From positions 1 through 64,000 of IMG/VR virus record IMGVR_UViG_3300031787_000001: a stretch of DNA of 64,000 bases; one strand, given 5' to 3'. This document shows, piece by piece, positions 14,230 to 56,170 of the stretch; the first letter of the stretch is position 1; each line of letters starts with the position of its first letter. A model generated the notes under the pieces. That model saw only the letters and a list, made by a program, of their open reading frames with translations. It ran no database searches and was not told the origin of the DNA. The translations under genes were made by a program, and so were the position numbers.

Positions 14230-14237
14230 TATAAATA
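14230..14237 (-). promoter_or_regulatory. Putative late promoter TATTTATA (tail tube); further copies at 14325-14332 and 14354-14361
   Basis: Same motif recurs upstream of about 19 structural genes in the window. Confidence 0.6.
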
Positions 14238-14429: not shown

Positions 14430-14445
14430 TGTTTCTCGTGAAACA
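14430..14445. promoter_or_regulatory. parS-like palindrome TGTTTCTCGTGAAACA
   Basis: 15/16 match to the bacterial parS consensus TGTTTCACGTGAAACA; intergenic; the palindrome extends into the AAA/TTT flanks. Confidence 0.6.
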
Positions 14446-14459
14446 TTTTTTAGAATAAA

Positions 14460-14484
14460 AAAGGTGGTCAACTAGACCACCTTT
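14460..14484 (-). terminator. Intrinsic terminator after the tail sheath gene
   Basis: AAAGGTGGTC-AACTA-GACCACCTTT perfect stem, followed by a T-run on the minus strand. Confidence 0.8.
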
Positions 14485-14503
14485 ATTTTTATCTCCTTTT
14501 AGA

Positions 14504-27673: not shown

Positions 27674-28831
27674 TTAATTATACACTCTTATTTCTATTGA
27701 TTCTATCGCATCTTGACCAATATCAATATAGTCTCCAACATTTACAATTCCATCATTAAAGACTAACTGAACTTCGTTATTTGATATTCTAACTCCTCCA
27801 GGAAATCCTGTATTTCCATTAAGACCATCATGAGTATAAATTATGAATGTTTTATTCTCAGGAAAAGCGTTACTTAAAGTACCCAAATAATATCCGACAT
27901 TATTTCTTGTCCAAACTATATCACCAATAGTATTTTCTAAAACAGTAACAACAGGGTCAGTTATTCCAGATTGTCTTAATAAAGCAGTGTACACTTTATA
28001 TTTAGGTCCATATGCCGTTGATTGTACCGTATCATCAGGGAAGGTTAGACCTGTAGTAGAAAAACTCCAAGCCGTCCCAACTCCATCTGAGAAGTTAATG
28101 TTTACGTTTGTCGGATTGGCAACCACTGCACTACCTGGTGCGGATGGTCCACTACTTATTAAGTCGGGAATTGCGGTAGTCTGAATAGATCCGTCGGGAA
28201 ACTCTAAAGATCCGTCTGCACCGAAGGTCCAGTTACTAGCAGTTATTGCTCCGCCAATATAAGTTGATGAAGTTGTTAAAAAATCACCTCCTGGTAGAAA
28301 GTAGTTACCTACTCCTCCATCTCCTTGTGGTGTTAGTACAGTACCAAATTGTAAAGTATAACCGCCAAGTATTCCAGGACCGTATATTGTCATACCATCT
28401 GTAATCGTACCGTTAATCATATCGGTAACATGTAGTGTTGCTCCTGGACCATCACCATATCCATTATCAATGTATCCTATAAATTCAACTTCTGCATCGG
28501 TTGTTTTTATTTGTACCTTATTTAATGAATCGCTTATTAATAGATTATTATTTTCACCACCAATTATTAAATCAGCGTTACTCTGATCAATAGTACCTCC
28601 GGCTCTAATGTGAATGTGATTAGGACCGGTTGGATCTAAAACAACGTAACGATTATCATCGGTACTTGCGTCAGGTTTTAGGATAAGTGTAGTCAATCCT
28701 GAACCATCACCCGAACTTTCAGGTATTGATTCTATTTGACTACCTTCAGGAAAATTAAGAGGACTTGTTAAATTTATTTGAGGTATTGTTTGTCCCGATA
28801 CGTTATTTACAATATATTTTGTTGTTGCCAT
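27674..28831 (-). CDS. Tail fibre / virion adhesin-like protein
   Basis: Gly/Thr/Asp-rich; repeated WTFGADGSLEFPDGSIQTTA and WSFSTTGLTFPDDTVQSTA fibre-shaft motifs. Confidence 0.6.
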   Translation of the reverse strand: MATTKYIVNNVSGQTIPQINLTSPLNFPEGSQIESIPESSGDGSGLTTLILKPDASTDDNRYVVLDPTGPNHIHIRAGGTIDQSNADLIIGGENNNLLISDSLNKVQIKTTDAEVEFIGYIDNGYGDGPGATLHVTDMINGTITDGMTIYGPGILGGYTLQFGTVLTPQGDGGVGNYFLPGGDFLTTSSTYIGGAITASNWTFGADGSLEFPDGSIQTTAIPDLISSGPSAPGSAVVANPTNVNINFSDGVGTAWSFSTTGLTFPDDTVQSTAYGPKYKVYTALLRQSGITDPVVTVLENTIGDIVWTRNNVGYYLGTLSNAFPENKTFIIYTHDGLNGNTGFPGGVRISNNEVQLVFNDGIVNVGDYIDIGQDAIESIEIRVYN

Positions 28832-28833
28832 TT

Positions 28834-31362
28834 TTATTCGTTTATATCTTTAATTGTTAATATATCACTTGAATCGTAATATGATAATCTTTTATTTCCA
28901 CCTTGTCTTTCAAAAATATGACAAGTATATGATTCATATACAGATGGATTAGGACTTACGCCGGTTATTGTTATTACAATGTCACCATCACCGTCAGAAC
29001 CACCAATAGCGGAACCTAATATAGTAATTGTGTCTCCAACATTGAAAGACGTTCCTGATGAAACAAGTGACATACTTGTAACCTCACCACCAACAGGTGT
29101 AAACTGAAAGTCAGAACCAACACCGTTTCCACTATTTATAAATTTAGTAGGTTCAAAAAGTTCAATAATCTGTGTTGACCATGGATTATCCGTTCTATTA
29201 GTTCCTAAAGCAGTATACGTAAATGATGTTATAATACCATAATTAGTTGTAAAATCAGTCCCACTAACGTCTGTATCAATAACATTCCATTGGAAGTAAT
29301 CACCAATAGTGTTATTTTGGAAGTAATTACCAACTCTATTATTGTAAAAGTATTCTCCAATAATATTATTTTGGAAAATATCACCAATGTAGTTTTTCTG
29401 TGAGTTAAATCCTCCAAATCCGAAACCTTCATCAATTATATTATTTTGGAAGAAACTACCAATTTCATTATGTTGGAAATTTTGTGCAATTGTATTTCCT
29501 TGAAAAGCAGAACCTATGTTGTTACCAACAAATCCGTCACCGATAATATTACTTGTAAATCCATCCTTAATTATATTTGCAAAAACATTACCAAAAAAGT
29601 CATTACCTAAGAAAAATGAACCGAAAGAATTATCGGCACAAATCCCACTAAATTCATTTCCTGAAACACCCCAACCTGTTTTATTGGTGTAAAACTCTTG
29701 ATATATTATATTACCTTTAAATTCATTGAATATTTGGTTATCGTAGAAATGACCATATATTGTGTTATTTTCAAATCGTTCTCCAATGATATTGGTATAA
29801 AAATCTGAGTTTATTGTGTTATTATAAAAATCATGATCAATTTGGTTTTTATAAATCGATTCGTTAATTGTATTGTTAGAGAATCTAGTACCTATTCTAT
29901 TTTCATAAAAATCTCTACTAGAAGGATTCAAAATATCACCTAATGTGTTATTCTCAAAATATTCACCGATAACATTATCATAAAACACACAATAAAGGTT
30001 ATTATTGTTAAATCCGTTACCAATTAAATTTCCATTACCTCCCCAATAAATTTCATTATTATAAAATCCATTACCAATATCGTTTTTATAAAATTGTTGT
30101 TTAATTTTATTATTATTGAACTGACTACCTATTTCGTTATTTTGAAAGTCTCCTCCACTTATTTCATTATCTCGGAAATCATTCATAATATTATTTCTAT
30201 AAAAACTATTTTGGACTATATAGTTGTTATAAAAGTTTTCACCAATTCTATTATATTGGAAATTTGAGGTAATTCTATTATTAAAAAACTCATTTCCGAT
30301 AACATTAGCATCAAAGTCATCATCAGTAATGTTGTTAAAGAAATAGTTTCCAATGTTATTATCATAACAATCATCAAAAAATGTGTTATTATAACAACTA
30401 TGACCAAATTTATTACCTATAAATCTATTATGAAAAACATTATTAGCTAAAATAAAGTCATTTTCATTCTCTTGATATAAATTGGCATGATTACCAATAT
30501 AATTGTTATAATTACCAGTACCGTCAAAAGTATAATACTCTCCAAATAAAGAAGGGTCATCTACATTGTTTTGATAATAACTACCATATTCGTCCCAAAA
30601 GGTACCATACATTTTAGTATTTGGACCTAAAGTTACGGTTGTTAATCCTGTAATAGCCATTTCGGTATCACTTACAATATTTGTTACTTCAAAAACCCTA
30701 AAATCATTATTAACCGATTCAAAACCAATCTTATCGCCCACTATAAGAGTACTTAAGAAAATAGTATCAGTACCAAAAACTGTCATTTCTGTTGAAGAAA
30801 TATCCGCAACACTAACAGTTCCTTGATATGGATTGTTTAGTGAAACTTCATAGTATCTATATCTTTTGAATAAAATTGTTCTATGATCGTAATCAGTTCT
30901 GTTATTAAACTCATCAATTCTTTCTGTTATTCTACCTTTAGCTGGTGATCCAGTTCTTTCTGTCACATTAAATGTTATATCATACTTAATACTATCTTTT
31001 GGATAAGAAGGTTGATATGCGTTTTCAGATAAAGTTGAATTTGATGTTGCAAACACAATTATTGAGTCAATATCCGCAACTTTATAGTTATTTCCGACTA
31101 TGGAATTTTTATTGTAATCATAATCAGGTTGATCATAACAAGTTTGGAAATCTGTTATTCTATAATAAGAACCGGCAACAAATGTTGCACCTGTATATTT
31201 GTCATATAACTCTGAGTAAGTAATATCCTCAAATGTTAGATTATTAGTTATAGATGAAAAATCTATATGATATGTTGACCCACTTAATTCTACCGGAAAT
31301 AATGTGTCCGAAGTGGGATTTGCTAGATTAGTTAATTGACCGATGGTTTTTCCTGTTAACAT
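28834..31362 (-). CDS. Fibre/adhesin with a long N-x-I-G-x-x-F beta-solenoid
   Basis: Dozens of 9-10 aa Asn/Phe-rich repeats; N-terminus MLTGKTIGQLTNL is shared with the neighbouring gene; late motif at 31379-31386. Confidence 0.65.
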   Translation of the reverse strand: MLTGKTIGQLTNLANPTSDTLFPVELSGSTYHIDFSSITNNLTFEDITYSELYDKYTGATFVAGSYYRITDFQTCYDQPDYDYNKNSIVGNNYKVADIDSIIVFATSNSTLSENAYQPSYPKDSIKYDITFNVTERTGSPAKGRITERIDEFNNRTDYDHRTILFKRYRYYEVSLNNPYQGTVSVADISSTEMTVFGTDTIFLSTLIVGDKIGFESVNNDFRVFEVTNIVSDTEMAITGLTTVTLGPNTKMYGTFWDEYGSYYQNNVDDPSLFGEYYTFDGTGNYNNYIGNHANLYQENENDFILANNVFHNRFIGNKFGHSCYNNTFFDDCYDNNIGNYFFNNITDDDFDANVIGNEFFNNRITSNFQYNRIGENFYNNYIVQNSFYRNNIMNDFRDNEISGGDFQNNEIGSQFNNNKIKQQFYKNDIGNGFYNNEIYWGGNGNLIGNGFNNNNLYCVFYDNVIGEYFENNTLGDILNPSSRDFYENRIGTRFSNNTINESIYKNQIDHDFYNNTINSDFYTNIIGERFENNTIYGHFYDNQIFNEFKGNIIYQEFYTNKTGWGVSGNEFSGICADNSFGSFFLGNDFFGNVFANIIKDGFTSNIIGDGFVGNNIGSAFQGNTIAQNFQHNEIGSFFQNNIIDEGFGFGGFNSQKNYIGDIFQNNIIGEYFYNNRVGNYFQNNTIGDYFQWNVIDTDVSGTDFTTNYGIITSFTYTALGTNRTDNPWSTQIIELFEPTKFINSGNGVGSDFQFTPVGGEVTSMSLVSSGTSFNVGDTITILGSAIGGSDGDGDIVITITGVSPNPSVYESYTCHIFERQGGNKRLSYYDSSDILTIKDINE

Positions 31363-31400
31363 GATTTTTTCTTTTTAATATAAATATCTTTTTAAATGAA

Positions 31401-31423
31401 AAACCCTCTAATTTAGAGGGTTT
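31401..31423 (-). terminator. Intrinsic terminator
   Basis: AAACCCTCTA-ATT-TAGAGGGTTT stem with T/A tracts on both sides. Confidence 0.75.
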
Positions 31424-31428
31424 GTTTT

Positions 31429-32472
31429 TTATACTGTTTCAGCAACAAATTTAAATTTATATGTTTTACTTGGATATGTTGCAGGTATTATAATACCAAA
31501 ACCATAATATTCATTACTGTACGGGTTAAACACCGCATCAATTGGACCGGCATATGTTGGACCATTTGGATTAAGACTCAAATCAAGAACTGCACCGAGT
31601 GTATTTGAATCACCTATCTGAGTTGGATTATTAACAACAGAAGATCCTGGAGTTACTCTAGTTGTATATGTGTATGGATACCATTCAATACCAACGAGAT
31701 CACCACCAATATCAACCCCACCACCTTGAAGACCTGAAGAAGATCCGTTAGGAGAAACTTTTAATGCTTTATATATACCAACAAATAATCCATACTTACC
31801 ATCGGCTTCAGTGTCCAATATATTTGTTGTTACCGTTAATTTACTAATTGATTGTGGTGTTGAAAAACTGTGCCAATATTGACTATCAGGATATAAAATT
31901 AAACTTGTATCAACATTTATACCTGAACCAATACCTATTGATGGTGCTTGAAAATAATCGTATACACCGAAAGCCTTTGTTTCTGTTCCACCAGTATGAC
32001 TAATCTCAAAAATTGGATAATCCGCCACATTTGAACTTAATGGTGTTACAGTTGTTGACCAACCGCCAGGTAATGGATTTTCATAACATACAAAATCATA
32101 TGATATACCATCGTTAGGTACTCTAAAAAATCCGTCTACTATACCATTAATATCACCACCACCATTTGATGGGAATACTCTAATTGATCTATCGGATTTA
32201 TTAACAACACTAACTCTCTTACCTTTAATTGGTGTTGTGGGTAATTTTACTGCAAAATTTTCAGTTGTTGCTGTTGTTATTACATTAATACCGTAAACCA
32301 ACACCGCGGTTGTACCACTATCAACACCTTGTGGTATCAAATCTGAAACCTGTTCAACAAATCCTGAATATATCACATGATATGTTTGACCATCAAGTTG
32401 TACTGGTATAAGTGAATCTTGTGTGATTCTGTTTAAATTCGTTAATTGACCAATTGTTTTTCCTGTTAACAT
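31429..32472 (-). CDS. Fibre/adhesin-like virion protein
   Basis: MLTGKTIGQLTNL anchor; AVKLPTTPIKGKRVSVVNKSDRSIRVFPSNGGDIN resembles phage fibre domains. Confidence 0.6.
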   Translation of the reverse strand: MLTGKTIGQLTNLNRITQDSLIPVQLDGQTYHVIYSGFVEQVSDLIPQGVDSGTTAVLVYGINVITTATTENFAVKLPTTPIKGKRVSVVNKSDRSIRVFPSNGGGDINGIVDGFFRVPNDGISYDFVCYENPLPGGWSTTVTPLSSNVADYPIFEISHTGGTETKAFGVYDYFQAPSIGIGSGINVDTSLILYPDSQYWHSFSTPQSISKLTVTTNILDTEADGKYGLFVGIYKALKVSPNGSSSGLQGGGVDIGGDLVGIEWYPYTYTTRVTPGSSVVNNPTQIGDSNTLGAVLDLSLNPNGPTYAGPIDAVFNPYSNEYYGFGIIIPATYPSKTYKFKFVAETV

Positions 32473-32499
32473 TTTATTTTTTTTTATTTTTTTATACTT

Positions 32500-33681
32500 T
32501 TATTCAATAAATTGAAGATAAAATCCCTCACCGATTGAAATATATTCATTATTATCTGTTATTATTGGATCTACTAGAACTTCATCTAATGGTGGACACT
32601 GACAATCACCAACATAAGTTATAGTGTAACTTGGGAATAAATCTAAATAAAAAGTTCCACCTGATATACAACTATTATCAAAAGGTGTATATTCTGTAAC
32701 ACCAGAATTTATGAGATCATTTTTTTGTTGTCCTGTACAACAATCAGTCCAAAATACATATGTAGAATCTGTAGTTACATCAAATTGAACTGATGTATAA
32801 CAACCTGAAATCGGTGACAGACACGTACCTGATGTAACTATTGGTAAAGGATTTTGTCCCGGACCAGTTAATTCCCACGTAGTAACTAAATCAGGTGTTG
32901 CAACATTGTCGCTACTAAAATAATAACTAGTTCCTATATTTTTTATAAACCAAAATCCTCCAAATCCTGGCTCCCAAACTATAAAATTATTTTCATTTGA
33001 ATATGAATTTTTACCATCTACAATTCCCACAAATGTGTATGTACCATTAACAATAGATGATCCCGCATCGGACACACAAATTGGTCCAAATGGATCAATT
33101 GTAGGCGTTGGCGTTGGTGTTGGTGTATCTGTTGGTGTTGGTGTAGGTGTATCTGTTGGCGTTGGTGTTGGGGCATTAATTAAAAAGATTTCTGCAATAG
33201 AACCAAGAGGTGCCCCCGATAAAATCGGTTGACCAAATAAAACTTCACCGGTCAAATTACTATATTCTTCATTTATTGTGACAATTGTTTGTCCTGTTAA
33301 GTTTGAGTGATTTATTGTAACACCAGTAGAAATAGTCACCGAACCACCTGAAAATAAACTTAAAAACATTTCAAAATATAAAGTAACGTTACCACTAACT
33401 CTACGATTAGAAATTAAGTTAAATTTACCAATTATTGAACCGGGTAAAATTTCTGTTTCTAAACTTAATTCTAATGGTGTTGGATCGGGTACCAATAAAG
33501 AATATGTGTGATCATATTCCCCAAAGTACAAATCATATATACCATATGGGTTTGTGTCATAATAATTAAATGGAACTGTTTTGACACCCAAATTAAACGA
33601 TCCACCGGAAGTTGGATTAAAAGTAACATTTGTTGTTTTACCACTCAAATTATTACTTAATATTCTTGCACCTATTGCCAT
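32500..33681 (-). CDS. Virion surface protein with a short Pro/Thr linker
   Basis: [24 protein letters not shown] linker and Cys-containing C-terminal modules; late motif at 33695-33702. Confidence 0.6.
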   Translation of the reverse strand: MAIGARILSNNLSGKTTNVTFNPTSGGSFNLGVKTVPFNYYDTNPYGIYDLYFGEYDHTYSLLVPDPTPLELSLETEILPGSIIGKFNLISNRRVSGNVTLYFEMFLSLFSGGSVTISTGVTINHSNLTGQTIVTINEEYSNLTGEVLFGQPILSGAPLGSIAEIFLINAPTPTPTDTPTPTPTDTPTPTPTPTIDPFGPICVSDAGSSIVNGTYTFVGIVDGKNSYSNENNFIVWEPGFGGFWFIKNIGTSYYFSSDNVATPDLVTTWELTGPGQNPLPIVTSGTCLSPISGCYTSVQFDVTTDSTYVFWTDCCTGQQKNDLINSGVTEYTPFDNSCISGGTFYLDLFPSYTITYVGDCQCPPLDEVLVDPIITDNNEYISIGEGFYLQFIE

Positions 33682-33736
33682 TTTTTATTTTATTTATAAA
33701 TATCTTTAATTTACTATTTATTTTTTCATATTAAAT

Positions 33737-35203
33737 TTATTCCAAAATTTCGTGATTCAGATCACCGGTTGGTATTATCAAATAAGACAATTCTCCGTTA
33801 GGTATAATTGTATATATTGTATCGTTATTTGGGATTATTAAGTGTGTTAAGTTATTAGGTATTATTAAATAAGACAAATCCCCGTTAGGTAATATATTAT
33901 AATTTATATCGTTATTTGGAATTATTAGATATGTTAAATCATTTTTTGGTGCAAATATAAATTCATAATTTATTGTATATTGAGCATTAATTGTATTTGG
34001 AACAACATTTAATTGATCATAAGATGCTGTGGCATTTAATAAATTGTAATCATCATTCAAATTAACAATCGTACTTCCACTAGTACCATTTTGCTCTATT
34101 GATACTGAATTTGTTATTGTTATTGGTGATCCCGATATCACACCAAGATTATTAACAAAATTTAATGTTATAGATTCAAATAATGGTTTATCTGACGTTA
34201 ATATATATTTTGATTTAATAGATCCTGGAGTGAAAATTGCCTTAAGATTTAAATTAAAATTCGTACCTGAACCAATTAAATTATCATCACATTTAACACC
34301 ACAAATTTCAAAATCAAACTCATTCAGTCTGGTCATAAAATTATGATAAACCTGAACAAAATTTAACGGTTCTTCATAATATTTTATTGTTTTTATATTA
34401 AATTCAGAAACACCTTCGTGAATACCCATCATTAATGGTGTACCACCTCCCCATGATTGTATGAATGGTTGAACACCTCTATTTGAAGGTATTACCTCTT
34501 CAAAATCTTTTATTTTTGCAATAGGTCTACCATTTAAATATATTTTTAAAATACCCAATCTGTTTTTTCTTTCATTCGCCCATTTTCTGTTTAAAACTTC
34601 AGGATACGAATAATCGGGAGTGGCCCCCGTCATAACATCAAGAGGATTGTTATTTAATGTTCTACCGGTAATTAAATCATTCCAACCACCATCATTTTCT
34701 AAATTACAATCTGTTAATCTTTTATATCGGTCAAATGTTATTGTAATATTAAAATCTTTATTTAGATCTGTAACACATAATGGGTCCGTTTGACCATTTG
34801 TAACATAATAAGATTCGGTATACCCACTATTTGTTTGACATATACCCAAATAACGAATTGCAGACCATTTTATTCTACCATCATTTGTAAAACCAAAAGA
34901 TAGGTTATTGTCTGCATAATTTTTAATGTTGTCATCACCCCTAACACCAATATAATAAAAAATACTACCTTGTGACCAATTTAAACCCTCTCTATTGAAT
35001 ACAAAGTCAAGGGTCCATCCTTTTTCTGGTCTTCTTTTTATTATACCATCACAATTATCGGGACCGGCACCACTATCAATTTTAAACGCCCAAGGTTTTA
35101 CACCCGTTTTTGGGGCTTGTGAACAACAATTATCAGGATCAGATAATTTTTCCACACAATCAATAATAGAAACCGAAAATCCCGAAATATTTAATATTGA
35201 CAT
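33737..35203 (-). CDS. Virion protein, possibly LamG/ConA-like, with C-terminal 10-aa repeats
   Basis: GWTLDFVF...LKIYLNG...IKTIKYYEEPL pattern; C-terminal (L/I)xYxIIPNxD repeats; late motif at 35215-35222. Confidence 0.5.
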   Translation of the reverse strand: MSILNISGFSVSIIDCVEKLSDPDNCCSQAPKTGVKPWAFKIDSGAGPDNCDGIIKRRPEKGWTLDFVFNREGLNWSQGSIFYYIGVRGDDNIKNYADNNLSFGFTNDGRIKWSAIRYLGICQTNSGYTESYYVTNGQTDPLCVTDLNKDFNITITFDRYKRLTDCNLENDGGWNDLITGRTLNNNPLDVMTGATPDYSYPEVLNRKWANERKNRLGILKIYLNGRPIAKIKDFEEVIPSNRGVQPFIQSWGGGTPLMMGIHEGVSEFNIKTIKYYEEPLNFVQVYHNFMTRLNEFDFEICGVKCDDNLIGSGTNFNLNLKAIFTPGSIKSKYILTSDKPLFESITLNFVNNLGVISGSPITITNSVSIEQNGTSGSTIVNLNDDYNLLNATASYDQLNVVPNTINAQYTINYEFIFAPKNDLTYLIIPNNDINYNILPNGDLSYLIIPNNLTHLIIPNNDTIYTIIPNGELSYLIIPTGDLNHEILE

Positions 35204-35249
35204 TACATTTTTTATATAAATATCAATGAAATAAAAGATTTGATAATAA

Positions 35250-35278
35250 AAAACCCCACATAATACATGTGGGGTTTT
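35250..35278 (-). terminator. Intrinsic terminator
   Basis: AAAACCCCACAT-AATAC-ATGTGGGGTTTT perfect 12-bp stem. Confidence 0.8.
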
Positions 35279-35300
35279 ATTTTTGATTTTTAATCAAATC

Positions 35301-35891
35301 TTATACTGCTAATTTTTTAACATATATTGTTGTTGGGGCACCGTTACTATTTGACGGGAATGGTGCATTTATTGATGGATTTATTGAAACTGTATAATAT
35401 GTTGGTGAAGTAATGTTAACAATTGTATGACCATATATTATTTGATCGTCCGAAGTCTCTGTACTTGAATAATCTGAAATCATATTACCTACAGTCATTG
35501 CACCGTTAGATGTTGTTGAACTATTTAATCTAACACTAACGTCGATACTATTGAATAAGTCAAAAATATGTACACTTGAAGTTATTTCATAAAATCCAGG
35601 TTCTTTAAAAAATATTCTAGCACCTGTATTACCTGCTTGTGTTGAGTTAACTAATTCAAAAATATCGGTATTACTATTAAGAATGGTAGTGTCCCATCTA
35701 GGATAGTTTTCAACACCATTTGTTAAGTTAGCATAGTTTGTTGTCCAAGAAAAAGATGCAACTGCGGAATCTAAAAAAACAGATCTGGTTACTTTAAATG
35801 TTTCTGTTTCACCACTATTATTCATCACCACGTATGAACCAGTGGTGTCCCCTGTAAATAAGGGTAATTGACTTATTTTAACGTTAGCCAT
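35301..35891 (-). CDS. Virion protein with a C-terminal jelly-roll (C1q/BclA-like) domain
   Basis: MANVKISQLP anchor-type start; FFKEPGFYEITSSVHI...YYTVS; late motif at 35904-35911. Confidence 0.5.
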   Translation of the reverse strand: MANVKISQLPLFTGDTTGSYVVMNNSGETETFKVTRSVFLDSAVASFSWTTNYANLTNGVENYPRWDTTILNSNTDIFELVNSTQAGNTGARIFFKEPGFYEITSSVHIFDLFNSIDVSVRLNSSTTSNGAMTVGNMISDYSSTETSDDQIIYGHTIVNITSPTYYTVSINPSINAPFPSNSNGAPTTIYVKKLAV

Positions 35892-35939: not shown

Positions 35940-37166
35940 TTAATACAAACCTACTTGATAAAATGTTTTACCTGATAAAATTAATTTTTCGGTAGAACTT
36001 CTACCTAAAACAATATGTGTTTCGGTAATACCTGTATTTGAATAATTAACAGTTTGTCCTGTCCAAGGAGAAATATTTATGGCGTCTACAACATCATCTA
36101 TTCTATTGGCGTATCCAAAATATGTAACACCACCAATTAGTCCACCAGCAAATACCAACCCAACAATTTTTCTTGTTCCTGAAATATCAGCAACAAGAGC
36201 GGATCCCGAATCACCACCATTTATTGGATATGAACATATACTACCATTCGGTGTTGTAGTTGCACTCGCAATAAATTGTATACATCTACCAAATTGAACC
36301 ACAGTGTCGTTCCCCTGCTTAGTATATGCAATATTAATTGTTACAGGATATGAATTTGTTAAAAGTTTCATTTCACCTTCACCTTTAGATCCGGTCGTTC
36401 TACCCGCACTAAATAAATTGTTTTTATTTGTTAATAATCCGTCAATTTCAGAAGAAGTTGCAAATTCGAGTGGTTGCGTCCATCCGGTAACACCTTCCAT
36501 TAAATAAGAAGTACTTATGTTAATATCTGAAGAATTAATGGTTGTTAATGCAACATCTGCATAGTTTATTGAACCACTTGAAATTGGTTTATATTTTTTT
36601 ACTTTACCAATTGCATTATTTAAACTTGAATTACCCGATTCATTTGGTTGTGTAACAAAATCATTAAGTATTGATGTTTTTATTCCACCTAAACTTCTAT
36701 CTGAATTTAAAAATGCATCGTAAACTAAAACATGATTATTTGATACACCCACCAATGAATTTGTCTCGTTGTCAACAGCCAAAAACCCCATCGTCCCAAC
36801 AAACCCACTTAAATCACTAAAATTTGTTACAGATATACCACATTTTAAAGGTCTTATTTTATTTCTATTGGATGGAGGTGTTGTTTGCCAATTATAAAAA
36901 TCAGAAGGACATGTTAATGGTTTTATTTCCAATTCTACCACATCTGTTTTAAATGTCTCACCAGAATATGTTATGGTATTTGGGATTAAATCTTTTTCAT
37001 CCACTTGTTCTATCGGTAATTTTTTCGACACACTGAAAATCAATGATTTTTCTGTTGTTAATAAACCATTTTTTGTTTTATATCCATATCCAACACCAAT
37101 AACATTATCTGAAGTCTCTTGTTGATATTTTATTGTCAATTCATCCAATAATTTCATGTCTTCCAT
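35940..37166 (-). CDS. Trypsin-like serine protease (Nal1-like) with N-terminal prodomain
   Basis: Catalytic triad motifs SNNHVL, YADVAL and GDSGSAL, plus GRTTG and VGLVFAG. Confidence 0.82.
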   Translation of the reverse strand: MEDMKLLDELTIKYQQETSDNVIGVGYGYKTKNGLLTTEKSLIFSVSKKLPIEQVDEKDLIPNTITYSGETFKTDVVELEIKPLTCPSDFYNWQTTPPSNRNKIRPLKCGISVTNFSDLSGFVGTMGFLAVDNETNSLVGVSNNHVLVYDAFLNSDRSLGGIKTSILNDFVTQPNESGNSSLNNAIGKVKKYKPISSGSINYADVALTTINSSDINISTSYLMEGVTGWTQPLEFATSSEIDGLLTNKNNLFSAGRTTGSKGEGEMKLLTNSYPVTINIAYTKQGNDTVVQFGRCIQFIASATTTPNGSICSYPINGGDSGSALVADISGTRKIVGLVFAGGLIGGVTYFGYANRIDDVVDAINISPWTGQTVNYSNTGITETHIVLGRSSTEKLILSGKTFYQVGLY

Positions 37167-37169: not shown

Positions 37170-40100
37170 TTATAAATTTGGTATAAAGATAAATAATGTG
37201 TTGACTGTTGAATCAATTATTAAAAAATCAGAATTTTCTGTTAATATATTATCCGAACCTTCCGTTGATAAATAATCTTCAGGGACACTTGTCGATGTTG
37301 GCGTTGGTGTAGGTGTTGGAGTTGGCGTCTCAGTTGGTGTAGGTGTACTAGTTTCAGTTGGTGTAGGTGTACTAGTTTCTGTTGGTGTAGGTGTACTAGT
37401 TTCTGTTGGCGTTTCTGTTGGTGTAGGTGTACTAGTTTCTGTTGGTGTAGGTGTACTAGTTTCTGTTGGCGTTTCTGTTGGTGTAGGTGTACTAGTTTCT
37501 GTTGGCGTTTCTGTTGGTGTAGGTGTACTAGTTTCTGTTGGTGTTGGCGTCTCCGTAGGAGTTGGCGTTTCTGTTGGCGTAGGTGTACTAGTTTCAGTTG
37601 GTGTTGGCGTACTAGTCTCCGTAGGAGTTGGTGTCTCGGTTGGCGTAGGTGTACTAGTTTCTGTTGGTGTTGGCGTTTCTGTTGGTGTCTCGGTTGGCGT
37701 TGGTGTACTAGTTTCAGTTGGTGTTGGTGACGGTGTTGGGTCAGGACACTCATCCTGTTCTAATGAAATATAATCACTATTCTCAGTTAATACATAAAAC
37801 CCATCTTCTTTTGTTAATAATTTTTCACAAGTTTCTATTGGTGTTGGTGTTGGCGTTTCAGTTGGTGTTGGCGTACTAGTCTCCGTAGGAGTTGGTGTCT
37901 CGGTTGGTGTTGGTGTTTCTGTTGCAGTTGGCGTAGGTGTTTCTGTTGCGGTTGGTGTAGGTGTACTAGTTTCTGTTGGTGTTGGCGTTGGTGTACTAGT
38001 TTCAGTTGGCGTTGGTGTACTAGTTTCTGTTGGTGTAGGTGTACTAGTTTCTGTTGGTGTTGGCGTTGGTGTACTAGTTTCTGTTGGTGTTGGCGTTGGT
38101 GTACTAGTTTCTGTTGGTGTTGGCGTCTCCGTAGGAGTTGGCGTTTCAGTTGGCGTTGGTGTACTAGTTTCTGTTGGTGTTGGCGTCTCCGTAGGAGTTG
38201 GCGTTTCAGTTGGTGTTGGCGTACTAGTCTCCGTAGGAGTTGGTGTCTCGGTTGGCGTTGGCGTAATAGTTTCAGTTGGTGTTGGGGACGGTGTTGGGGT
38301 CGGTGTTGCTGTAGGTGTAGGAGTAGGTATTGTCACATACACATAGTTAGTTGAAATTGTGAAACCACTTAAAGTTCCTCCTGTTGTATTAACAGTAATA
38401 TTTTCAAATTGAGATTCTAGTGTTAGTTCATTATAATTACCATTTGTTACGATTTGTGTCGTTCCACTTGTTGTACCACTTGATAATAATAATGTAACAT
38501 TATTAATTATCGGACTTCCAGTTGTGGTATATAATACCTCATCAAAATTTAAAGAAATGTCAAAATCATATTGTTGAAATATATATGTATTATAATTACT
38601 GATTATTGAACCTTCAGTATGTTCAGATTCAATAATTATTGTACCACAATTTCCATCTTCAAATATTATATAATCACCATTTTCAGTTGTTATTAAATTA
38701 CCATTTTCACCTTCAACTATTATTTCACATAATGGTAATGTAGGTGTTGGTGTTGGAGTTGGTGTTTCTGTTGGAGTTGGAGTCTCAGTTGGTGTAGGCG
38801 TTGGCGTACTAGTTTCAGTTGGTGTAGGCGTTGGCGTACTAGTTTCAGTTGGTGTAGGCGTTGGTGTTTCTGTTGCAGTTGGCGTTGGCGTACTAGTTTC
38901 AGTTGGTGTAGGCGTTGGTGTTTCTGTTGCAGTTGGCGTTGGGGTTGATGTTGCGGTTGGTGTAGGCGTTGGAATAGGTCCGGGTTCCGCACCAAAAATA
39001 CCCCATAAAAGATTTGTTCTAAATTCTATACCAGTAAATGTTAATGTTATTTGACTATGTGTACCTGGGAATCTTATAACACCATATCCTTCATTTGATG
39101 ATATTTTTTTATTTATTGGATCAACTATTAGTCCATTAAAACATGTCGGATAACATGGATCAAAATTAACAAAATCAACATCGGTAAAGAATGTTTGAGT
39201 TTGTGTCGGCGAACCTAAAGACCAAACACCTAATAATGCGTCTGTTATTTGAGGATTAAATGTAAAGGTTAATTGATTTGGACCCTCAACTAAATAGGTT
39301 ATACCAGTACTCGGTTGTGTAACATCAGTACATGTTAAACAATCTGTAAATTGTGCACTTTCTTTACTTACAATTCCCGATCCACTATAACTCACTGAAA
39401 CATCATGAGATTGTGTTGTTGTTATAATTTGACCTTCAGTAACACCTGTATTTATAAAATATTCCCAAACAATATTTTGAATACTTGGTGTTGGTGGAAG
39501 TGTAGGTGTTGGAGGAGTACAATCGTTTATCTCGGTATATATTATACTACCATCTTCTGTTGTTATAATGATATCATTTTCACCTGACACAACACCAATA
39601 CAAGTACCTATATTAGTGGTTATACCACCTTCATCATCAATAACACTTGATGCACAGAAATAAACCTGACTATTACCCGAAACTTCAATTGTGATAGGTG
39701 AAGAAGTTAAACAATCCAAATATGTTACAAAACTTGAACTTGGGAAAGTGTTATTTGCTAAATAACAATAACAATTAAGTATAGTAGGTGTTGGCGTTGG
39801 TGTAGGTGTACTAGTTTCTGTTGGTGTAGGTGTACTAGTTTCTGTTGGTGTAGGTGTACTAGTTTCAGTTGGTGTTGGTGTACTAGTTTCTGTTGGTGTA
39901 GGTGTACTAGTTTCAGTTGGCGTTGGTGTACTAGTTTCAGTTGGTGTAGGTGTACTAGTTTCTGTTGGTGTTGGTGTACTAGTTTCAGTTGGCGTTGGGG
40001 TTGATGTTGCGGTTGGAGTACTAGTTGCAGTTGGAGTACTAGTTGCAGTTGGAGTACTAGTTGCAGTTGGAGTACTAGTTGCAGTTGGAGTACTAGTTGC

Positions 40101-40622
40101 AGTTGGTGTTGGAGTACTAGTTGCAGTTGGTGTTGGAGTACTAGTTGCTGTTGGAGTACTAGTTGCGGTTGGGGTTGGTGTAATTGTGGGTGTTGGGGTT
40201 AATGTCGGGCTAGGTGTTGGTGTCGGAATGGCAATACTTAAATAATGAGTTTCTCCCGATATTCCAACATATGTATATATATGATTACTTAGTATTATAT
40301 GAGAATAGATATATTCAGGAACATTAAAATGTGTTACAAATTCATTGTAGTTAAATGTTACAGATAAACCGGAATATATATAATTAGGATTATTTATCGT
40401 ATTATCTATCTCAACAAGTGTTATTGTTAAGGTATTACTACTAAAATTTTCTAAACTATCGTCTATTTTTAATGAATTATAAAAAATTGGACCACTAAAA
40501 TCAAGTACCTCTTTATTGTAATCATTACCTATTTTTGATAATTCATAATCGTAATATTCTGAGCTATCCAATTTAACATCTAATCTAGACCCAAAAAACT
40601 TTAAAATGTTCTGATTATTCAT
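37170..40622 (-). CDS. 1150-aa mucin-like virion protein with four Pro/Thr(Glu/Ser) tracts separating small beta domains
   Basis: Translation shows (TPTPTETS)n tracts; late motif TATTTATT at 40628-40635. Confidence 0.8.
37285..37742 (-). repeat. PT tract 4 (18/24-nt degenerate coding repeats)
   Basis: Repeats of GGTGTACTAGTTTCTGTT / GGTGTAGGT units; boundaries approximate. Confidence 0.85.
37835..38330 (-). repeat. PT tract 3
   Basis: Same repeat family; boundaries approximate. Confidence 0.85.
38737..38975 (-). repeat. PT tract 2
   Basis: Same repeat family; boundaries approximate. Confidence 0.85.
39782..40230 (-). repeat. PT tract 1
   Basis: TATSTP and TETSTPTP units; boundaries approximate. 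Confidence 0.85.
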
Positions 40623-40652
40623 ATTTTAATAAATATCTTTCGAAACGTTTGA

Positions 40653-40660
40653 TATTTATA
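40653..40660 (+). promoter_or_regulatory. Putative late promoter TATTTATA, back to back with TATTTATT (40628-40635) on the minus strand
   Basis: Divergent pair inside a 50-bp intergenic region. Confidence 0.6.
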
Positions 40661-40672
40661 TAAAAAACTGTA

Positions 40673-44144: not shown

Positions 44145-45365
44145 ATGTCAAAAATTAAAATTTTAGCAATTCCATCCGATTCATTTGGTGTAGGTAAATT
44201 CAGGATGTTAGATCCATATAAATTTATTGGTGATAATTATACAGATGAGATACATGTAGACATCGTATATAATGTTCAAAACATTGACGACGCTTTCAAA
44301 GATTACAATATTGTTATTTTCCACTCTTTTATTCACCAATTACCACATGAAGTCAATATTGCAAGAATTAATTGGTTAAAACAAAGAGGTGTAAAAGTTA
44401 TAATGGATATTGATGATTTATGGTATGTTGATCATAGACATCCTTTATATTATCACATAATGAAAGAAAAGATCGGTGATAAAAAAATTCAGATGTTAAA
44501 ATTGGTTGACTATGTGACAACAACAACACCAATTTTTGCTAAAACAATAAAAGAAAAATTAGGTATTAAAAATGTAGAAATTTTTCCAAACGCAGTTAAC
44601 CCAGAAGAAAAACAATTTCAACCAAATCCAATATCATCAGATAAAATAAAGTTTGGTTGGCTCGGAGGATCAACACACTTACACGATTTAGATTTATTAA
44701 GAAATGGTATATCAAGTTTACATTATTCACATAGAGGAAAAGTACAATTTGTTTTGTGTGGATTTGACTTGAGGGGTACAATGACCGAAGTAAATAAAAT
44801 GACAGGGGAAGTTGTTAGGAGAGACATCAAACCAATGGAAACGGTTTGGTATGAATATGAAAAAATATTCACAGACAATTATACAATATTAGATGAACAA
44901 TATAAAAACTTTTTATTAACATTTGTTAAAACAGATCAGTATTTTTCTGAGATGCCTTATATTAGAAGGTGGACAGAAGATGTTAGTGAGTATGGTAAAA
45001 ATTATAACTATTTTGACGTTTCTTTAGTACCTTTAGTTGAAAATGTTTTTAACACAAACAAATCACAACTTAAAGTTATTGAGGCGGGATTTCACAAAAA
45101 AGCAATCATTGCAAATGAAAGTTTACCATATACATTAGATTTAAAATCGGCCTTTAATGATGGTAAGTTTAATGAAACGGGAAATGCTCTTTTTGTGTCT
45201 CAAAACAAAAATCACAAACAATGGGCACAACAAATGAAAAGATTGGCCGATAATCCAAATATGATTACAGATTTAGGTGAAAAATTATATGAAACAGTTA
45301 AAGACAAATATTCATTACAGAAAGTTTCTAAAGATAGAGTTGAGTTCTTAAAATCAATAATATAA
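44145..45365 (+). CDS. GT-B fold glycosyltransferase
   Basis: IMDIDDLW, IFPNAVN, KFGWLGGSTHLHDL, SLVPLVENVFNTNKSQLKVIEAG. Confidence 0.85.
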   Translation: MSKIKILAIPSDSFGVGKFRMLDPYKFIGDNYTDEIHVDIVYNVQNIDDAFKDYNIVIFHSFIHQLPHEVNIARINWLKQRGVKVIMDIDDLWYVDHRHPLYYHIMKEKIGDKKIQMLKLVDYVTTTTPIFAKTIKEKLGIKNVEIFPNAVNPEEKQFQPNPISSDKIKFGWLGGSTHLHDLDLLRNGISSLHYSHRGKVQFVLCGFDLRGTMTEVNKMTGEVVRRDIKPMETVWYEYEKIFTDNYTILDEQYKNFLLTFVKTDQYFSEMPYIRRWTEDVSEYGKNYNYFDVSLVPLVENVFNTNKSQLKVIEAGFHKKAIIANESLPYTLDLKSAFNDGKFNETGNALFVSQNKNHKQWAQQMKRLADNPNMITDLGEKLYETVKDKYSLQKVSKDRVEFLKSII

Positions 45366-47978: not shown

Positions 47979-48211
47979 AAGTTAAAGAAAATTCAAATCA
48001 GAATGATGAAAATTCTGAAGAAGATACACAAACAATAAATATTTTTAAATATGAACTTTTAAAAATATTCATTGAGAGAATATTAGGCGAGAATTTTGAA
48101 GATGATGAAACAATTGGATCATTTGGGTCGGAAACCACAACATTATCATTTAAAATAGCTTTTAACACTTTAATAAAAAATCAAATTTTAATCGAAAACG
48201 AAGATGAGTAA
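47912..48211 (+). CDS. Hypothetical acidic protein
   Basis: Coupled to both neighbours; GKEYYIDIDRI...FKIAFNTLIKNQIL. Confidence 0.7.
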   Translation: MLEIFGKEYYIDIDRITEECRIEVKENSNQNDENSEEDTQTINIFKYELLKIFIERILGENFEDDETIGSFGSETTTLSFKIAFNTLIKNQILIENEDE

Positions 48212-49268
48212 CAAAGAGAACATTGAAAATTTAGAAATCGCCTTGTCAAGGCTAGAGTCAAATAAACAAATTTTTTATTTTTTGACGTATGACACAAAAA
48301 ATAACCCAAGAGCGTCGGTAAAGTATATCTACGACTTGGCACTAACACTAAATAAACAGGGATATATTTCCAAGATTTTAGTGGAAGATAAGACATATAC
48401 TGGCGTTGAACATTGGTTAGGTGACAAATACAAAGATTTACCCGTCGTGTCGATAAAAGAAGATAAAATAGAAATTAATATTGACGATGTAATTGTTGTA
48501 CCCGAATATTATTCAAATGTTTTAGAACAATTGTCTAATATAAAATGTGTAAAAGTAATGTTAGTACAACAAAAAGATTACATGTTTGAAACATTGTCTA
48601 TTGGTAGTAGATGGAGTAATTTTGGTTTCGATAAGGTAATCACAACAACTAATAATACTAAAAAATATATTTCAGAATATTTTCCTGAAGTTTTAGTACA
48701 CGTTATTCCACCAATTATCGGTGAAAATTTTAAACCATATGAGAAACCAATTAAACCATATATTGCAATAAGTTGTAGAAATAGATCTAAAAGTAGAAAA
48801 CTAATATCTGAATTTTATTTAAAATTCCCACAATTAAGGTGGATTACTTTTAGAGACATGGTTCAAATGACTTATGATGAATTTGCATCTTCATTAAAAG
48901 AATGTTTTGTTTCAGTATGGGTTGATGAAGAAAGTACTTTTGGTACGTTTCCATTAGAGTCTATGAAATGTGGTGTACCTGTTGTCGGTAAAATACCAAA
49001 TAATGAACCAGATTGGTTAAGTGAAAATGGTATGTGGACATATGATGAAAGTAAGTTAGTTGAAATATTGGGTACATATGTTTTGGCTTGGTTGGAAGGT
49101 GTTGAATTAACAGATGATGTTAAAACAAAAATGAAAGATACACTGTTACCTTATGACTCCACTATTACAGAAAATAACATAATAAGTATTTTTAATTCTT
49201 TTAAAGATAGAAGAGAAGAACAAATTAAAAATGCATTACAAAAATTAAAAACAGAAGAAACAGTATGA
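48204..49268 (+). CDS. GT-B fold (GT4-like) glycosyltransferase
   Basis: DVIVVPEYY; VWVDEESTFGTFPLESMKCGVPVVG matches E-x-F-G-x-x-x-x-E-A-M-x-x-G. Confidence 0.85.
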   Translation: MSNKENIENLEIALSRLESNKQIFYFLTYDTKNNPRASVKYIYDLALTLNKQGYISKILVEDKTYTGVEHWLGDKYKDLPVVSIKEDKIEINIDDVIVVPEYYSNVLEQLSNIKCVKVMLVQQKDYMFETLSIGSRWSNFGFDKVITTTNNTKKYISEYFPEVLVHVIPPIIGENFKPYEKPIKPYIAISCRNRSKSRKLISEFYLKFPQLRWITFRDMVQMTYDEFASSLKECFVSVWVDEESTFGTFPLESMKCGVPVVGKIPNNEPDWLSENGMWTYDESKLVEILGTYVLAWLEGVELTDDVKTKMKDTLLPYDSTITENNIISIFNSFKDRREEQIKNALQKLKTEETV

Positions 49269-56157: not shown

Positions 56158-56170
56158 AATATTTATAAAT

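What the first reader, a model, noticed from the sequence alone, without database searches (positions are those of the whole stretch)
37170..40622. Mucin-like virion protein plus three phage glycosyltransferases: candidate virion glycan shield
Seen: roughly half of the 1150-aa protein is Thr/Pro/Ser/Glu repeats in four tracts; a smaller PT linker occurs in 32500..33681; GT-B, GT4-like and GT2 enzymes lie 4-9 kb away. Established: PT linkers are typical O-glycosylation substrates, and some phages glycosylate their virion proteins with their own glycosyltransferases. Inference: a glycosylated flexible stalk for adhesion, protease resistance or spacing. The near-identical 18/24-nt units could also let the stalk length vary by slippage.
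Basis: partly seen in the sequence, partly recalled or inferred. Interest (0 to 1): 0.6.

Follow-up and report, generated by a model that had tools for sequence, protein, structure and literature searches.

The report
Thr/Pro-rich modular phage fibre protein
A giant freshwater T4-like phage encodes a 1150-residue protein, half of it threonine/proline spacer with small binding-type modules strung along it; it is probably a fast-evolving virion appendage, and although the phage has many sugar-transferring enzymes, nothing yet shows that they coat this protein.

Summary
ORF 37170-40622 (-) encodes 1150 aa, 47.8% of it in four Thr/Pro/Ser/Glu tracts. A second PT-linker gene lies at 32500-33681. 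Three soluble glycosyltransferases lie 3.5-9.4 kb away.

The window is part of a 287-kb T4-like jumbo phage from lake metagenomes. The protein is a string of small modules: a clade-wide N-terminal module, an all-beta domain also found in phage fibre-like proteins and Bacteroidota surface proteins, an Ig-like domain and four 28-aa mini-modules. PT spacers separate them.

The gene heads a hypervariable fibre-gene cassette. It carries the promoter-like motif seen before the tail tube, sheath and fibre genes. In distant relatives its counterparts sit directly upstream of the tail sheath. I read it as a virion, probably tail-associated, tether or adhesin. This is inferred, not shown.

The PT-coding DNA holds 120 exact in-frame repeats. 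One 60-nt unit differs between two otherwise identical assemblies, and close relatives have reshuffled the modules.

The glycan-shield idea is only partly supported. Prerequisites for DNA glycosylation are absent and a second glycan gene cluster exists. However, the three enzymes are core genes kept where the slot protein has no PT tract, and one enzyme family occurs in phages without PT tracts.

The parts
37170..40622 (-). Gene for the 1150-aa PT-rich modular protein (P0001)
   Evidence: Open frame; no Pfam family; no TM or signal peptide; 99.96-100% identical copies in other lake metagenomes
40227..40622 (-). N-terminal domain, aa 1-132. Its first ~57 aa form a module that starts the first gene of this slot in every related locus fetched that reaches it
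   Evidence: Alignment A1 of 30 sequences with 14 invariant columns in aa 1-51. AlphaFold2 leaves aa 1-41 disordered and gives a small alpha/beta domain for aa 60-133
39780..40226 (-). PT tract 1 (aa 133-281)
   Evidence: Sister contigs L006 and L018 break inside it
39519..39779 (-). Cys-rich segment plus first C-x26-C mini-module (aa 282-368)
   Evidence: Cys positions; internal similarity of the mini-modules
38979..39482 (-). Central all-beta domain (aa 381-548)
   Evidence: 59% identical to the L008 950-aa protein. 39 representatives among 1.84 billion proteins, including PT-bearing phage-like proteins and Bacteroidota T9SS surface proteins. The fold model is of low confidence
38733..38978 (-). 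PT tract 2 (aa 549-630)
38334..38732 (-). Second C-x26-C mini-module (aa 632-659) plus an Ig-like domain (aa 660-763) shared weakly with other fibre-cluster proteins
   Evidence: Local blastp gives E 2e-6 to 33737-35203 and 7e-5 to 32500-33681
37830..38333 (-). PT tract 3 (aa 764-931)
   Evidence: Sister contig L007 breaks inside it
37746..37829 (-). Third C-x26-C mini-module (aa 932-959)
37278..37745 (-). PT tract 4 (aa 960-1115). It holds the 60-nt unit (about 37446-37505) that is missing in contig L006
   Evidence: Global alignment shows one 60-nt gap and 0 mismatches over 2852 nt. The longest exact repeat is 89 nt at a spacing of 60
37173..37277 (-). Fourth, Cys-less mini-module and a hydrophobic C-terminal tail that is conserved in the proteins lying just upstream of the protease gene in relatives
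40623..40672 (.). Divergent intergenic region with the promoter-like motif GATATTTAT facing both ways
   Evidence: The motif lies upstream of 45 of 369 genes, against 5 for its reverse complement
35940..37166 (-). Trypsin-like serine protease homologue (GDSGS motif), next to PT genes even in relatives only 38% identical
   Evidence: phrog_20754 at E 5e-23; synteny
27674..35891 (-). Fibre-like gene cluster: 196, 488 (lectin-like N-domain), 393 (PT linker), 347, 842 (repeat beta-helix-like) and 385 aa. It is replaced by other genes in a relative whose PolB is 97% identical
44145..45365 (+). Glycosyltransferase A: GT-B type, soluble
   Evidence: phrog_7162 at E 2e-37; 26% identical to phi92 gp164, annotated as GT-B fold; no TM
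48204..49268 (+). Glycosyltransferase B: GT-B, related to the Agt/AmGGT alpha-glucosyltransferases, soluble
   Evidence: PDB 8xsg at E 1.5e-12 (PMC12159676); 70-77% identical in the 78 fetched loci from other phages, out of 153 relatives found
49265..50056 (+). GT2-family glycosyltransferase, soluble; its start overlaps the stop of the previous gene
   Evidence: PF00535 at E 1.6e-11; no TM
12859..17335 (-). Tail module used as context: sheath 14504-17335, tube 13711-14199, baseplate hub 12859-13608
   Evidence: phrog_23 at 4e-61, phrog_4542 at 6e-27, phrog_150 at 2e-12

Best explanation
The gene encodes a late-expressed virion appendage of a T4-like jumbo phage, most likely attached to the tail. 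A conserved N-terminal module would anchor it. Four extended Thr/Pro spacers, up to roughly 150 nm in total if stretched, would then hold out small binding-type modules (a beta domain, an Ig-like domain and four 28-aa acidic mini-modules) as a flexible tether for first contact with the host surface. The spacer-coding DNA consists of long exact repeats, all in frame. Slippage or unequal recombination can therefore change spacer length, delete modules or swap them without breaking the frame, which would make this slot a rapidly evolving host-range cassette. Shown here: the architecture, the repeat structure, the module reshuffling between relatives, one repeat-unit length difference and the genomic context. 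Inferred: virion location, binding function and anchoring by the N-terminal module. Whether the spacers carry sugars is open, and I put that at about 0.3.
For: Genome type: Gp23-type capsid protein at E 3e-73 and tail sheath, tube and hub in a 286,785-bp record. Architecture and composition. No signal peptide or TM segment, so the protein is made in the cytoplasm, as virion parts are. A promoter-like motif is shared with the tail tube, sheath and all fibre-cluster genes and is orientation-specific, 45 against 5. Distant relatives have the order PT proteins, protease, tail sheath, tube. The slot between gene 40673 and PolB varies from one gene to about 14 kb, while PolB stays 97% identical in the closest relative. 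The first gene of the slot always starts with the same ~57-aa module, followed by a variable payload. Payloads in relatives include a ConA-like lectin domain (PF13385, 7e-9) and a cohesin domain (PF00963, 3e-7). Relatives of the central domain include a protein with a tail-fibre-type N-terminus and Bacteroidota T9SS surface proteins. Repeat DNA: 120 exact repeats of 24-89 nt, and all 1627 24-mer pairs are in frame. One clean 60-nt indel separates two assemblies. In relative L008 the same modules are spread over two genes of 844 and 950 aa with different PT units.
Against: No virion proteome, expression data or cultured relative exists (searches found nothing among 50,697 phage records). Both fold models are weak (pLDDT 62 and 47) and gave no significant structural match. 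The temporal class of the promoter-like motif is unknown, and it also precedes PhoH and gene 40673. The tail link comes from synteny in distant relatives; in this genome about 18 kb of replication and other genes lie between. Tract lengths, and so the 60-nt difference, could be assembly effects, because short-read contigs never bridge a tract.
Confidence: 0.6

Rival explanations
1. The Thr residues of the PT tracts are O-glycosylated in the cytoplasm by the phage's own soluble glycosyltransferases. One GT-B enzyme would start the chain, and the Agt-like glucosyltransferase and the GT2 enzyme would extend it. The result would be a stiff, protease-resistant, glycan-coated stalk or shield.
For: All seven GT-type proteins checked (eight GT domains) and all six PT proteins lack TM segments and signal peptides. 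No phage protein has four or more TM segments, so the phage encodes no flippase, polymerase or oligosaccharyltransferase of its own. A second cluster at 208.5-217.7 kb holds FdtA, a DegT aminotransferase, two methyltransferases and four more GT-type proteins, headed by a gene with the same promoter-like motif. GT 48204 is related to Agt/AmGGT, enzymes that extend glucose chains. Routes to glycosylated DNA are not detected. Precedents are glycosylated mycobacteriophage capsids and glycosylated mimivirus fibrils made by viral enzymes.
Against: The three GTs are syntenic core genes in every one of the 80 loci that covers their position, including 12 loci (8 distinct slot proteins) with no PT tract. 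Because no fetched locus that covers them lacks the GTs, co-variation cannot be tested. GT-A family members (26-35% identity) occur in phi92 and in a 735-kb phage with no (TP)4 tract. GT 44145 has a TATAAT-like upstream element rather than the motif of the fibre genes. No enzyme here matches a known protein O-glycosyltransferase family.
Confidence: 0.3
2. The glycosyltransferases act on host envelope glycans (lipid-linked O-antigen or capsule precursors at the inner face of the membrane), or on another acceptor such as the capsid protein. The PT tracts would then be plain unglycosylated spacers.
For: FdtA/DegT-type amino-sugar genes and GT2/GT4-like enzymes are typical of O-antigen and capsule loci (established knowledge; families found). 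The GTs are conserved independently of PT content. The GT trio sits among nucleotide-metabolism and regulatory genes (dUTPase, PhoH, a sigma-like gene), not among structural genes.
Against: The phage has no initiating phosphoglycosyltransferase, flippase or polymerase candidate, since nothing carries four or more TM segments. It would have to rely wholly on host machinery. A strictly lytic T4-like phage gains less from receptor conversion than a temperate one (inference).
Confidence: 0.3
3. The glycosyltransferases hypermodify the phage DNA, as in T-even phages, RB69 and DLP3.
For: The phage is T4-like. A ThyA homologue lies 3 kb from the second GT cluster. The GT trio flanks dUTPase-like and PhoH genes. 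Glycosylated cytosines are widespread in Straboviridae (PMC13326640).
Against: The ThyA homologue keeps the LPPCH motif and the residues matching E. coli D169 and N177. It is therefore a canonical dTMP synthase, not a hydroxymethylase or 5-hydroxy-dCMP synthase by the published diagnostic. There is no Tet/JBP dioxygenase and no T4 alpha- or beta-glucosyltransferase family.
Confidence: 0.07
4. The protein is not part of the virion. It could be a soluble product released at lysis (a decoy, a matrix component, or a scaffoldin-like organiser of other proteins), or its length could be an assembly artefact.
For: No direct evidence places it in virions. A cohesin domain in a distant counterpart recalls scaffoldins. 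Contigs break in the tracts.
Against: The unique domains recur at 100% identity, in the same order, in independent metagenomes from at least 16 studies. Context and promoter motif match tail and fibre genes.
Confidence: 0.12

Closest known systems
Pro/Thr linkers of bacterial cellulases and cellulosomal scaffoldins
   Same: Long PT-rich extended spacers join small folded binding modules. A counterpart in a distant relative carries a true cohesin domain (PF00963) and another carries a ConA-like lectin domain. In bacteria such linkers are often O-glycosylated, which protects them from proteases (established knowledge).
   Different: Those proteins are secreted and carry signal peptides, whereas this one has none and is phage-encoded. 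No catalytic domain or dockerin was recognised. The spacers make up almost half of the chain.
Mycobacteriophage virion glycosylation (Che8-type; Freeman et al. 2023, cited through PMC11256854 and PMC12582341)
   Same: Phage-encoded glycosyltransferases, with the proposal that glycans on virion proteins form a shield.
   Different: There the acceptors are capsid and tail-tube subunits and the glycans were shown by mass spectrometry. Here the acceptor is unknown, the candidates are PT-rich fibre proteins, and the GT families were not shown to be related. The primary paper could not be read here.
Mimivirus glycosylated fibrils (PMC9614988)
   Same: A large virus with its own amino-sugar pathway (aminotransferase, tailoring enzymes, several GTs) and surface fibres. 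The fibrils carry virus-made glycans and mediate attachment.
   Different: That is a eukaryotic giant virus with unrelated fibril proteins and an unrelated capsid. No sequence relationship was tested or claimed.
Cytoplasmic glycosylation of bacterial adhesins: serine-rich repeat proteins with GtfA/GtfB, and HMW1-type adhesins with NGT plus Agt
   Same: Repeat-rich adhesins are modified in the cytoplasm by soluble GT-B enzymes and then extended by further GTs. GT 48204 is related to the Agt/AmGGT group.
   Different: The repeats here are Thr/Pro, not Ser-rich. No accessory Sec system and no NGT (GT41) was found. The match to AmGGT is moderate (E 1.5e-12) and says nothing about the acceptor.
Collagen-like repeats flanking the variable regions of Streptococcus thermophilus phage receptor-binding proteins (own knowledge, not checked here)
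   Same: In-frame simple repeats inside a host-range gene serve as recombination joints for swapping modules.
   Different: The repeat chemistry differs (Gly-X-Y triple helix against a PT spacer), and so do the phage group and the scale.
T4 Hoc and other Ig-like phage decoration proteins
   Same: Dispensable surface modules proposed to give weak adherence to glycans.
   Different: Hoc has no PT spacers and sits on the capsid hexamers. No homology was found.

Membership tests
Mucin-like (PTS-domain) glycoprotein | Long tandem repeats rich in Pro, Thr and Ser | tested here: met
   47.8% of residues lie in PT(S/E) tracts, with T 29.7% and P 15.8% overall
Mucin-like (PTS-domain) glycoprotein | Dense O-glycosylation of the repeats | not testable with these tools
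   Needs glycoproteomics. No sequence-based evidence either way
Phage virion glycosylation system (Che8-type) | Phage-encoded glycosyltransferases | tested here: met
   Three GTs in the window and four more GT-type proteins plus sugar-tailoring genes at 208.5-217.7 kb
Phage virion glycosylation system (Che8-type) | Glycans covalently attached to virion structural proteins | not testable with these tools
   No virions or mass spectra are available
Phage virion glycosylation system (Che8-type) | GT presence tracks presence of the acceptor | tested here: inconclusive
   The GT trio is present in all 80 loci where covered, including 12 loci (8 distinct slot proteins) without a PT tract. Both near-complete relatives do have PT tracts elsewhere. 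GT-A relatives occur in PT-free phages
Phage tail fibre / receptor-binding protein | Conserved N-terminal attachment part with a variable distal part | tested here: met
   The ~57-aa N-terminal module is invariant at 14 positions in all 30 aligned sequences, while payloads differ
Phage tail fibre / receptor-binding protein | Encoded with tail or fibre genes and co-regulated with them | tested here: inconclusive
   The gene heads a cluster of fibre-like genes and shares their upstream motif with the tube and sheath genes. It is adjacent to the sheath only in distant relatives
Phage tail fibre / receptor-binding protein | Present in the virion; oligomeric fibre structure | not testable with these tools
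   Fold models were weak.
T-even type DNA glycosylation | Enzyme that makes a hydroxylated or hydroxymethylated pyrimidine | tested here: not met
   The single ThyA homologue has canonical residues. No Tet/JBP
T-even type DNA glycosylation | T4 alpha- or beta-glucosyltransferase family | tested here: not met
   PF11440 and PF09198 are absent from the 287-kb genome
Serine-rich repeat adhesin / GtfAB system | Ser-rich repeats, GtfA/GtfB pair, accessory Sec export | tested here: not met
   The repeats are Thr/Pro. No polytopic membrane protein exists in the genome. GT 44145 gave only a sub-threshold GT4 N-domain hit
Cellulosome-type scaffoldin | Cohesin modules joined by PT linkers, secreted, dockerin partners | tested here: not met
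   The window protein has no cohesin; only a distant counterpart has one. No signal peptide. No dockerin recognised

The most novel reading that the evidence does not exclude
A whole clade of freshwater jumbo phages carries a self-contained cytoplasmic system for mucin-type O-glycosylation. It would consist of core soluble GTs plus an amino-sugar pathway and would coat PT-rich, bead-on-a-string virion fibres. This would be a 'phage mucin' whose spacer length and binding modules are reshuffled through in-frame repeat recombination. The 28-aa acidic mini-modules might act as docking knobs for cohesin-like partners.
Probability: 0.22. Interest if true: 0.8.

Novelty: new variant of a known kind. 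Interest (0 to 1): 0.55.

Why it matters
If the protein is a virion tether, it shows a design not described for cultured phages: disordered Thr/Pro spacers replace rigid trimeric shafts and carry interchangeable binding modules. The spacer DNA would double as in-frame recombination joints, giving a simple route to fast host-range change in an abundant, uncultured group of lake phages. If the spacers are also glycosylated by the phage's own enzymes, protein glycosylation of virions would extend from actinobacteriophages and giant viruses to T4-like phages. The core GT set of this clade would then have a function that can be tested by co-expression in E. coli.

Tried and rejected
- Word-index protein search of aa 281-550: no hit.
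- tblastn of the N-domain, the central domain and the lectin-like domain against 50,697 phage records: no hit. Megablast of the locus: no hit. GT 48204 against phages: no hit.
- Pfam and NCBIfam gave nothing for the protein or most neighbours. The phrog_15511 hits map onto the PT tracts of several proteins, so they reflect composition only.
- AlphaFold2 of the N-domain (pLDDT 62) and the central domain (pLDDT 47) gave poor models. Foldseek against PDB returned no hit at E <= 0.001, only a non-significant flavour of carbohydrate-binding modules and adhesin domains. A second fold search was not accepted.
- ESM Atlas returned only unnamed clusters at 0.90-0.92 for the central domain and nothing for the N-domain.
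- Read-level repeat polymorphism could not be tested. All runs are held as Logan contigs, none bridges a tract, and word depth in the tracts is up to 3800x against about 10x because many organisms share the same words.
Nothing is claimed from it.
- My first estimate of a 54-nt indel, taken from local alignments, was corrected to 60 nt by global alignment.
- Context look-up of a central-domain relative with a tail-fibre-type N-terminus gave only a 1.6-kb contig.
- The reverse-strand ORFs inside the gene (37241-37753 and 38720-38995) are Gly/Val read-throughs of the repeats, not genes.
Full report
**What is there**

ORF 37170-40622 on the minus strand is open for 1150 codons. Thr makes up 29.7% of the protein, Pro 15.8%, Ser 9.0% and Glu 8.3%. 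In all, 550 residues (47.8%) lie in four long tracts at aa 133-281, 549-630, 764-931 and 960-1115, plus a 12-residue tract at 369-380.

At the DNA level, Tandem Repeats Finder reports units of 18 to 60 nt. The gene contains 120 maximal exact direct repeats of 24-89 nt, whereas the PolB gene used as control has none. All 1627 pairs of identical 24-mers are spaced by a multiple of three.

The shorter PT linker in 32500-33681 is real. So are the three glycosyltransferases at 44145-45365, 48204-49268 and 49265-50056.

One caveat applies. In four lake metagenomes the unique domains are covered by contigs identical to the window, but no contig bridges a tract. Sister contigs from other samples end inside tracts 1 and 3. 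The exact tract lengths therefore rest on this single assembly.

**The genome**

The window is the first 64 kb of a 286,785-bp IMG/VR virus record with 30% G+C. The last 126 bases of the record repeat bases 9-134, which is typical of a circularly closed assembly.

It is a distant T4-like myovirus:
- Gp23-type major capsid protein at E 3e-73.
- Tail sheath, tube and baseplate hub.
- PolB, PhoH and dUTPase.
- 23 tRNAs.

No cultured relative is close; the best capsid identity is about 41%. Near-identical DNA occurs in lake and freshwater metagenomes from at least 16 studies.

**Anatomy of the protein**

From N to C terminus the parts are:
- An N-terminal domain, aa 1-132.
- PT tract 1.
- A Cys-rich segment ending in a 28-residue module bracketed by two cysteines (C-x26-C, aa 341-368).
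- An all-beta central domain, aa 381-548.
- PT tract 2.
- A second C-x26-C module (aa 632-659), followed by an Ig-like domain (aa 660-763) weakly similar to domains in other fibre-cluster proteins.
- PT tract 3.
- A third C-x26-C module (aa 932-959).
- PT tract 4.
- A fourth, Cys-less copy of the module and a short hydrophobic tail.

There is no signal peptide and no membrane segment. Pfam gives nothing. The phrog_15511 hit maps onto PT tracts in this and other proteins, so it reflects composition only.

**Comparative evidence**

Using the neighbouring protease gene and GT 48204 as handles, I fetched 91 related loci.

In all loci that reach it, the first gene of the slot between gene 40673 and PolB begins with the same ~57-residue module. 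In the 30 aligned sequences, 14 of its columns are invariant. What follows differs widely. It may be an extra beta domain, a lectin-like domain (the homologue of the N-domain of 33737-35203), or PT tracts from zero to more than 500 residues. There may also be a ConA-like lectin domain (PF13385), the acidic mini-modules, or simply a 207-aa minimal form. The slot ranges from one gene to about 14 kb.

In the closest distinct relative (PolB 97% identical, protease 84%), the modules of the window protein are spread over two genes of 844 and 950 aa. These use different PT units. One of them begins with the lectin-like domain that in the window belongs to a separate gene.

More distant relatives (protease 38% identical) show the order PT-rich proteins, protease, tail sheath, tube. 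One of those PT-rich proteins carries a cohesin domain (PF00963).

The central domain is rare: 39 representatives at E <= 1e-3 among 1.84 billion proteins. Many of these are PT-bearing, phage-like proteins. One has a tail-fibre-type N-terminus. Several bacterial ones carry the Bacteroidota type IX secretion signal.

**Regulatory context**

A motif, ATATTTAT followed by A or T, lies 5-45 nt upstream of 45 of 369 genes. Its reverse complement does so for only 5. The 45 genes include the tail tube, all five large fibre-cluster genes, this gene, another PT protein at 250.8 kb, and the small gene that heads the second glycan cluster. The sheath gene carries the motif at -50. It also precedes PhoH and gene 40673, so its temporal class is not established. 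GT 44145 instead has a TATAAT-like element.

**Interpretation of the protein**

Several lines point to a virion appendage, most likely associated with the tail:
- Synthesis in the cytoplasm.
- A conserved N-terminal module with a variable payload.
- A position at the head of a hypervariable fibre cassette.
- Tail synteny in distant relatives.
- A shared upstream motif with tail and fibre genes.
- Binding-type domains with relatives in adhesins.

In this reading the PT tracts act as long flexible spacers, of order 150 nm if fully extended. That figure is my estimate from about 0.3 nm per residue. None of this is shown directly, and I give it 0.6.

**Repeat instability**

Contig L006, from another metagenome, matches the window over 2852 nt with no mismatch. 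The only difference is one 60-nt in-frame gap at about 37446-37505. That equals the spacing of the longest exact repeat, which is 89 nt.

Thirty-three exact repeats link tract 4 with tract 1 across 2.4 kb, always in frame. Recombination between tracts would therefore remove or exchange whole modules cleanly. This matches the differences seen between relatives. Slippage is thus plausible, but short-read assembly cannot exclude a collapsed repeat.

**The glycosylation question**

In favour of a protein acceptor:
- All seven GT-type proteins checked (eight GT domains) are soluble, and no phage protein has four or more membrane segments. The phage therefore encodes no flippase, polymerase or oligosaccharyltransferase of its own.
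- A second cluster at 208.5-217.7 kb encodes FdtA, a DegT aminotransferase, two methyltransferases, a dual GT2, another GT2, a GT8-like protein and a TOD1/MUCI70-like protein.
- GT 48204 is related to the Agt/AmGGT glucosyltransferases.
- The DNA rival is weak. The single ThyA homologue keeps the residues of a normal dTMP synthase by the published diagnostic. There is no Tet/JBP enzyme and no T4-type DNA glucosyltransferase.

Against a specific link between the GTs and the PT tracts:
- The three GTs are syntenic core genes in every fetched locus that covers them, including 12 loci (8 distinct slot proteins) with no PT tract.
- Both near-complete relatives do hold PT tracts elsewhere in their genomes, so profiling has no contrast to work with.
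- Relatives of GT 44145 occur in phi92-like phages and in a 735-kb phage, and neither has a (TP)4 tract.

I put glycosylated PT spacers at about 0.3. Action of the GTs on host envelope precursors or on another acceptor is about equally likely. DNA modification is below 0.1.

**Comparison with known systems and verdict**

The nearest analogues in how it would work are the PT linkers of cellulases and scaffoldins, glycosylated mycobacteriophage virions, glycosylated mimivirus fibrils, and the cytoplasmic glycosylation of repeat-rich bacterial adhesins. The protein is not a demonstrated member of any of these. Literature searches found no phage protein described with PT spacers of this kind.

I rate it a new variant of a known kind, with moderate interest. 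The architecture and its evolutionary behaviour are well documented here. The glycan shield remains a testable hypothesis.

Noticed in passing
window 35940-37166 (-): A trypsin-like serine protease homologue (GDSGS motif, phrog_20754) stays next to PT-rich genes even in relatives only 38% identical. The proteins just upstream of it share a short hydrophobic C-terminal tail. This could mean a processing or docking relationship.
   Followed up: partly
own genome 208521-217681 (locus L097 10521-19681): A second glycan cluster lies outside the window: FdtA ketoisomerase, DegT aminotransferase, two methyltransferases, a dual GT2, a GT2, a GT8-like protein and a TOD1/MUCI70-like protein. This suggests synthesis of a methylated 3-amino-3,6-dideoxyhexose glycan.
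   Followed up: partly
own genome 250765-264883 (locus L098): Four more PT-linker proteins (695, 315, 779 and 2329 aa) form a second cluster. Two of them share an N-terminal ~60-aa domain with window gene 32500-33681. No family annotation was found beyond composition-driven hits.
   Followed up: partly
window-wide, e.g. 40623-40672, and upstream of 13711-14199, 28834-31362, 32500-33681, 33737-35203, 35301-35891: An orientation-specific promoter-like motif, ATATTTAT[AT], lies upstream of 45 of 369 genes against 5 for its reverse complement. Before the sheath gene and 32500-33681 it overlaps the T4 late-promoter word TATAAATA.
   Followed up: partly
window 33771-33937 (C-terminus of 33737-35203): An 87-nt tandem repeat encodes about six copies of a ~10-residue motif ending in Ile-Pro-Asn. 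It resembles the C-terminal tail of the PT protein and may be a fibre-shaft-like repeat.
   Followed up: no
window 28834-31362 (-) and 31429-32472 (-): The two genes share their first ~13 residues, a fibre-type N-terminus. The 842-aa protein has a long run of Asn/Gly/Phe-rich short repeats that suggests a beta-helix.
   Followed up: no
own genome 81744-88990: There are 23 tRNA genes, including Thr(UGU), Pro(UGG) and Glu(UUC). These read ACA, CCA and GAA, the dominant Thr, Pro and Glu codons of the PT tracts.
   Followed up: no
window gene starts in general: Gene starts lack Shine-Dalgarno-like sequences. Together with 30% G+C and central-domain relatives carrying the Bacteroidota T9SS signal, this hints at a Bacteroidota host.
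   Followed up: no
window 56135-57934 (+): The DUF5872 match is split over two adjacent ORFs: profile positions 1-39 at the end of 56135-56626 and 39-115 at the start of 56639-57934. This could be a split gene, a frameshift or an intervening element.
   Followed up: no
window 50056-50754 (+): A 232-aa protein just downstream of the GT2 gene has a weak sigma-70 region 2 match (E 2e-4). It may be a phage sigma factor.
   Followed up: no
locus L099 (phage phi92, record positions 102200-105376): phi92 has four adjacent glycosyltransferase genes. One is annotated with a polypeptide GalNAc-transferase-like fold and one is related to window GT 44145. Their acceptor appears to be unknown.
   Followed up: no
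own genome ends (1-134 and 286660-286785): The last 126 bases equal bases 9-134. This suggests a circularly closed assembly, although the record is classed as linear and 86% complete.
   Followed up: partly
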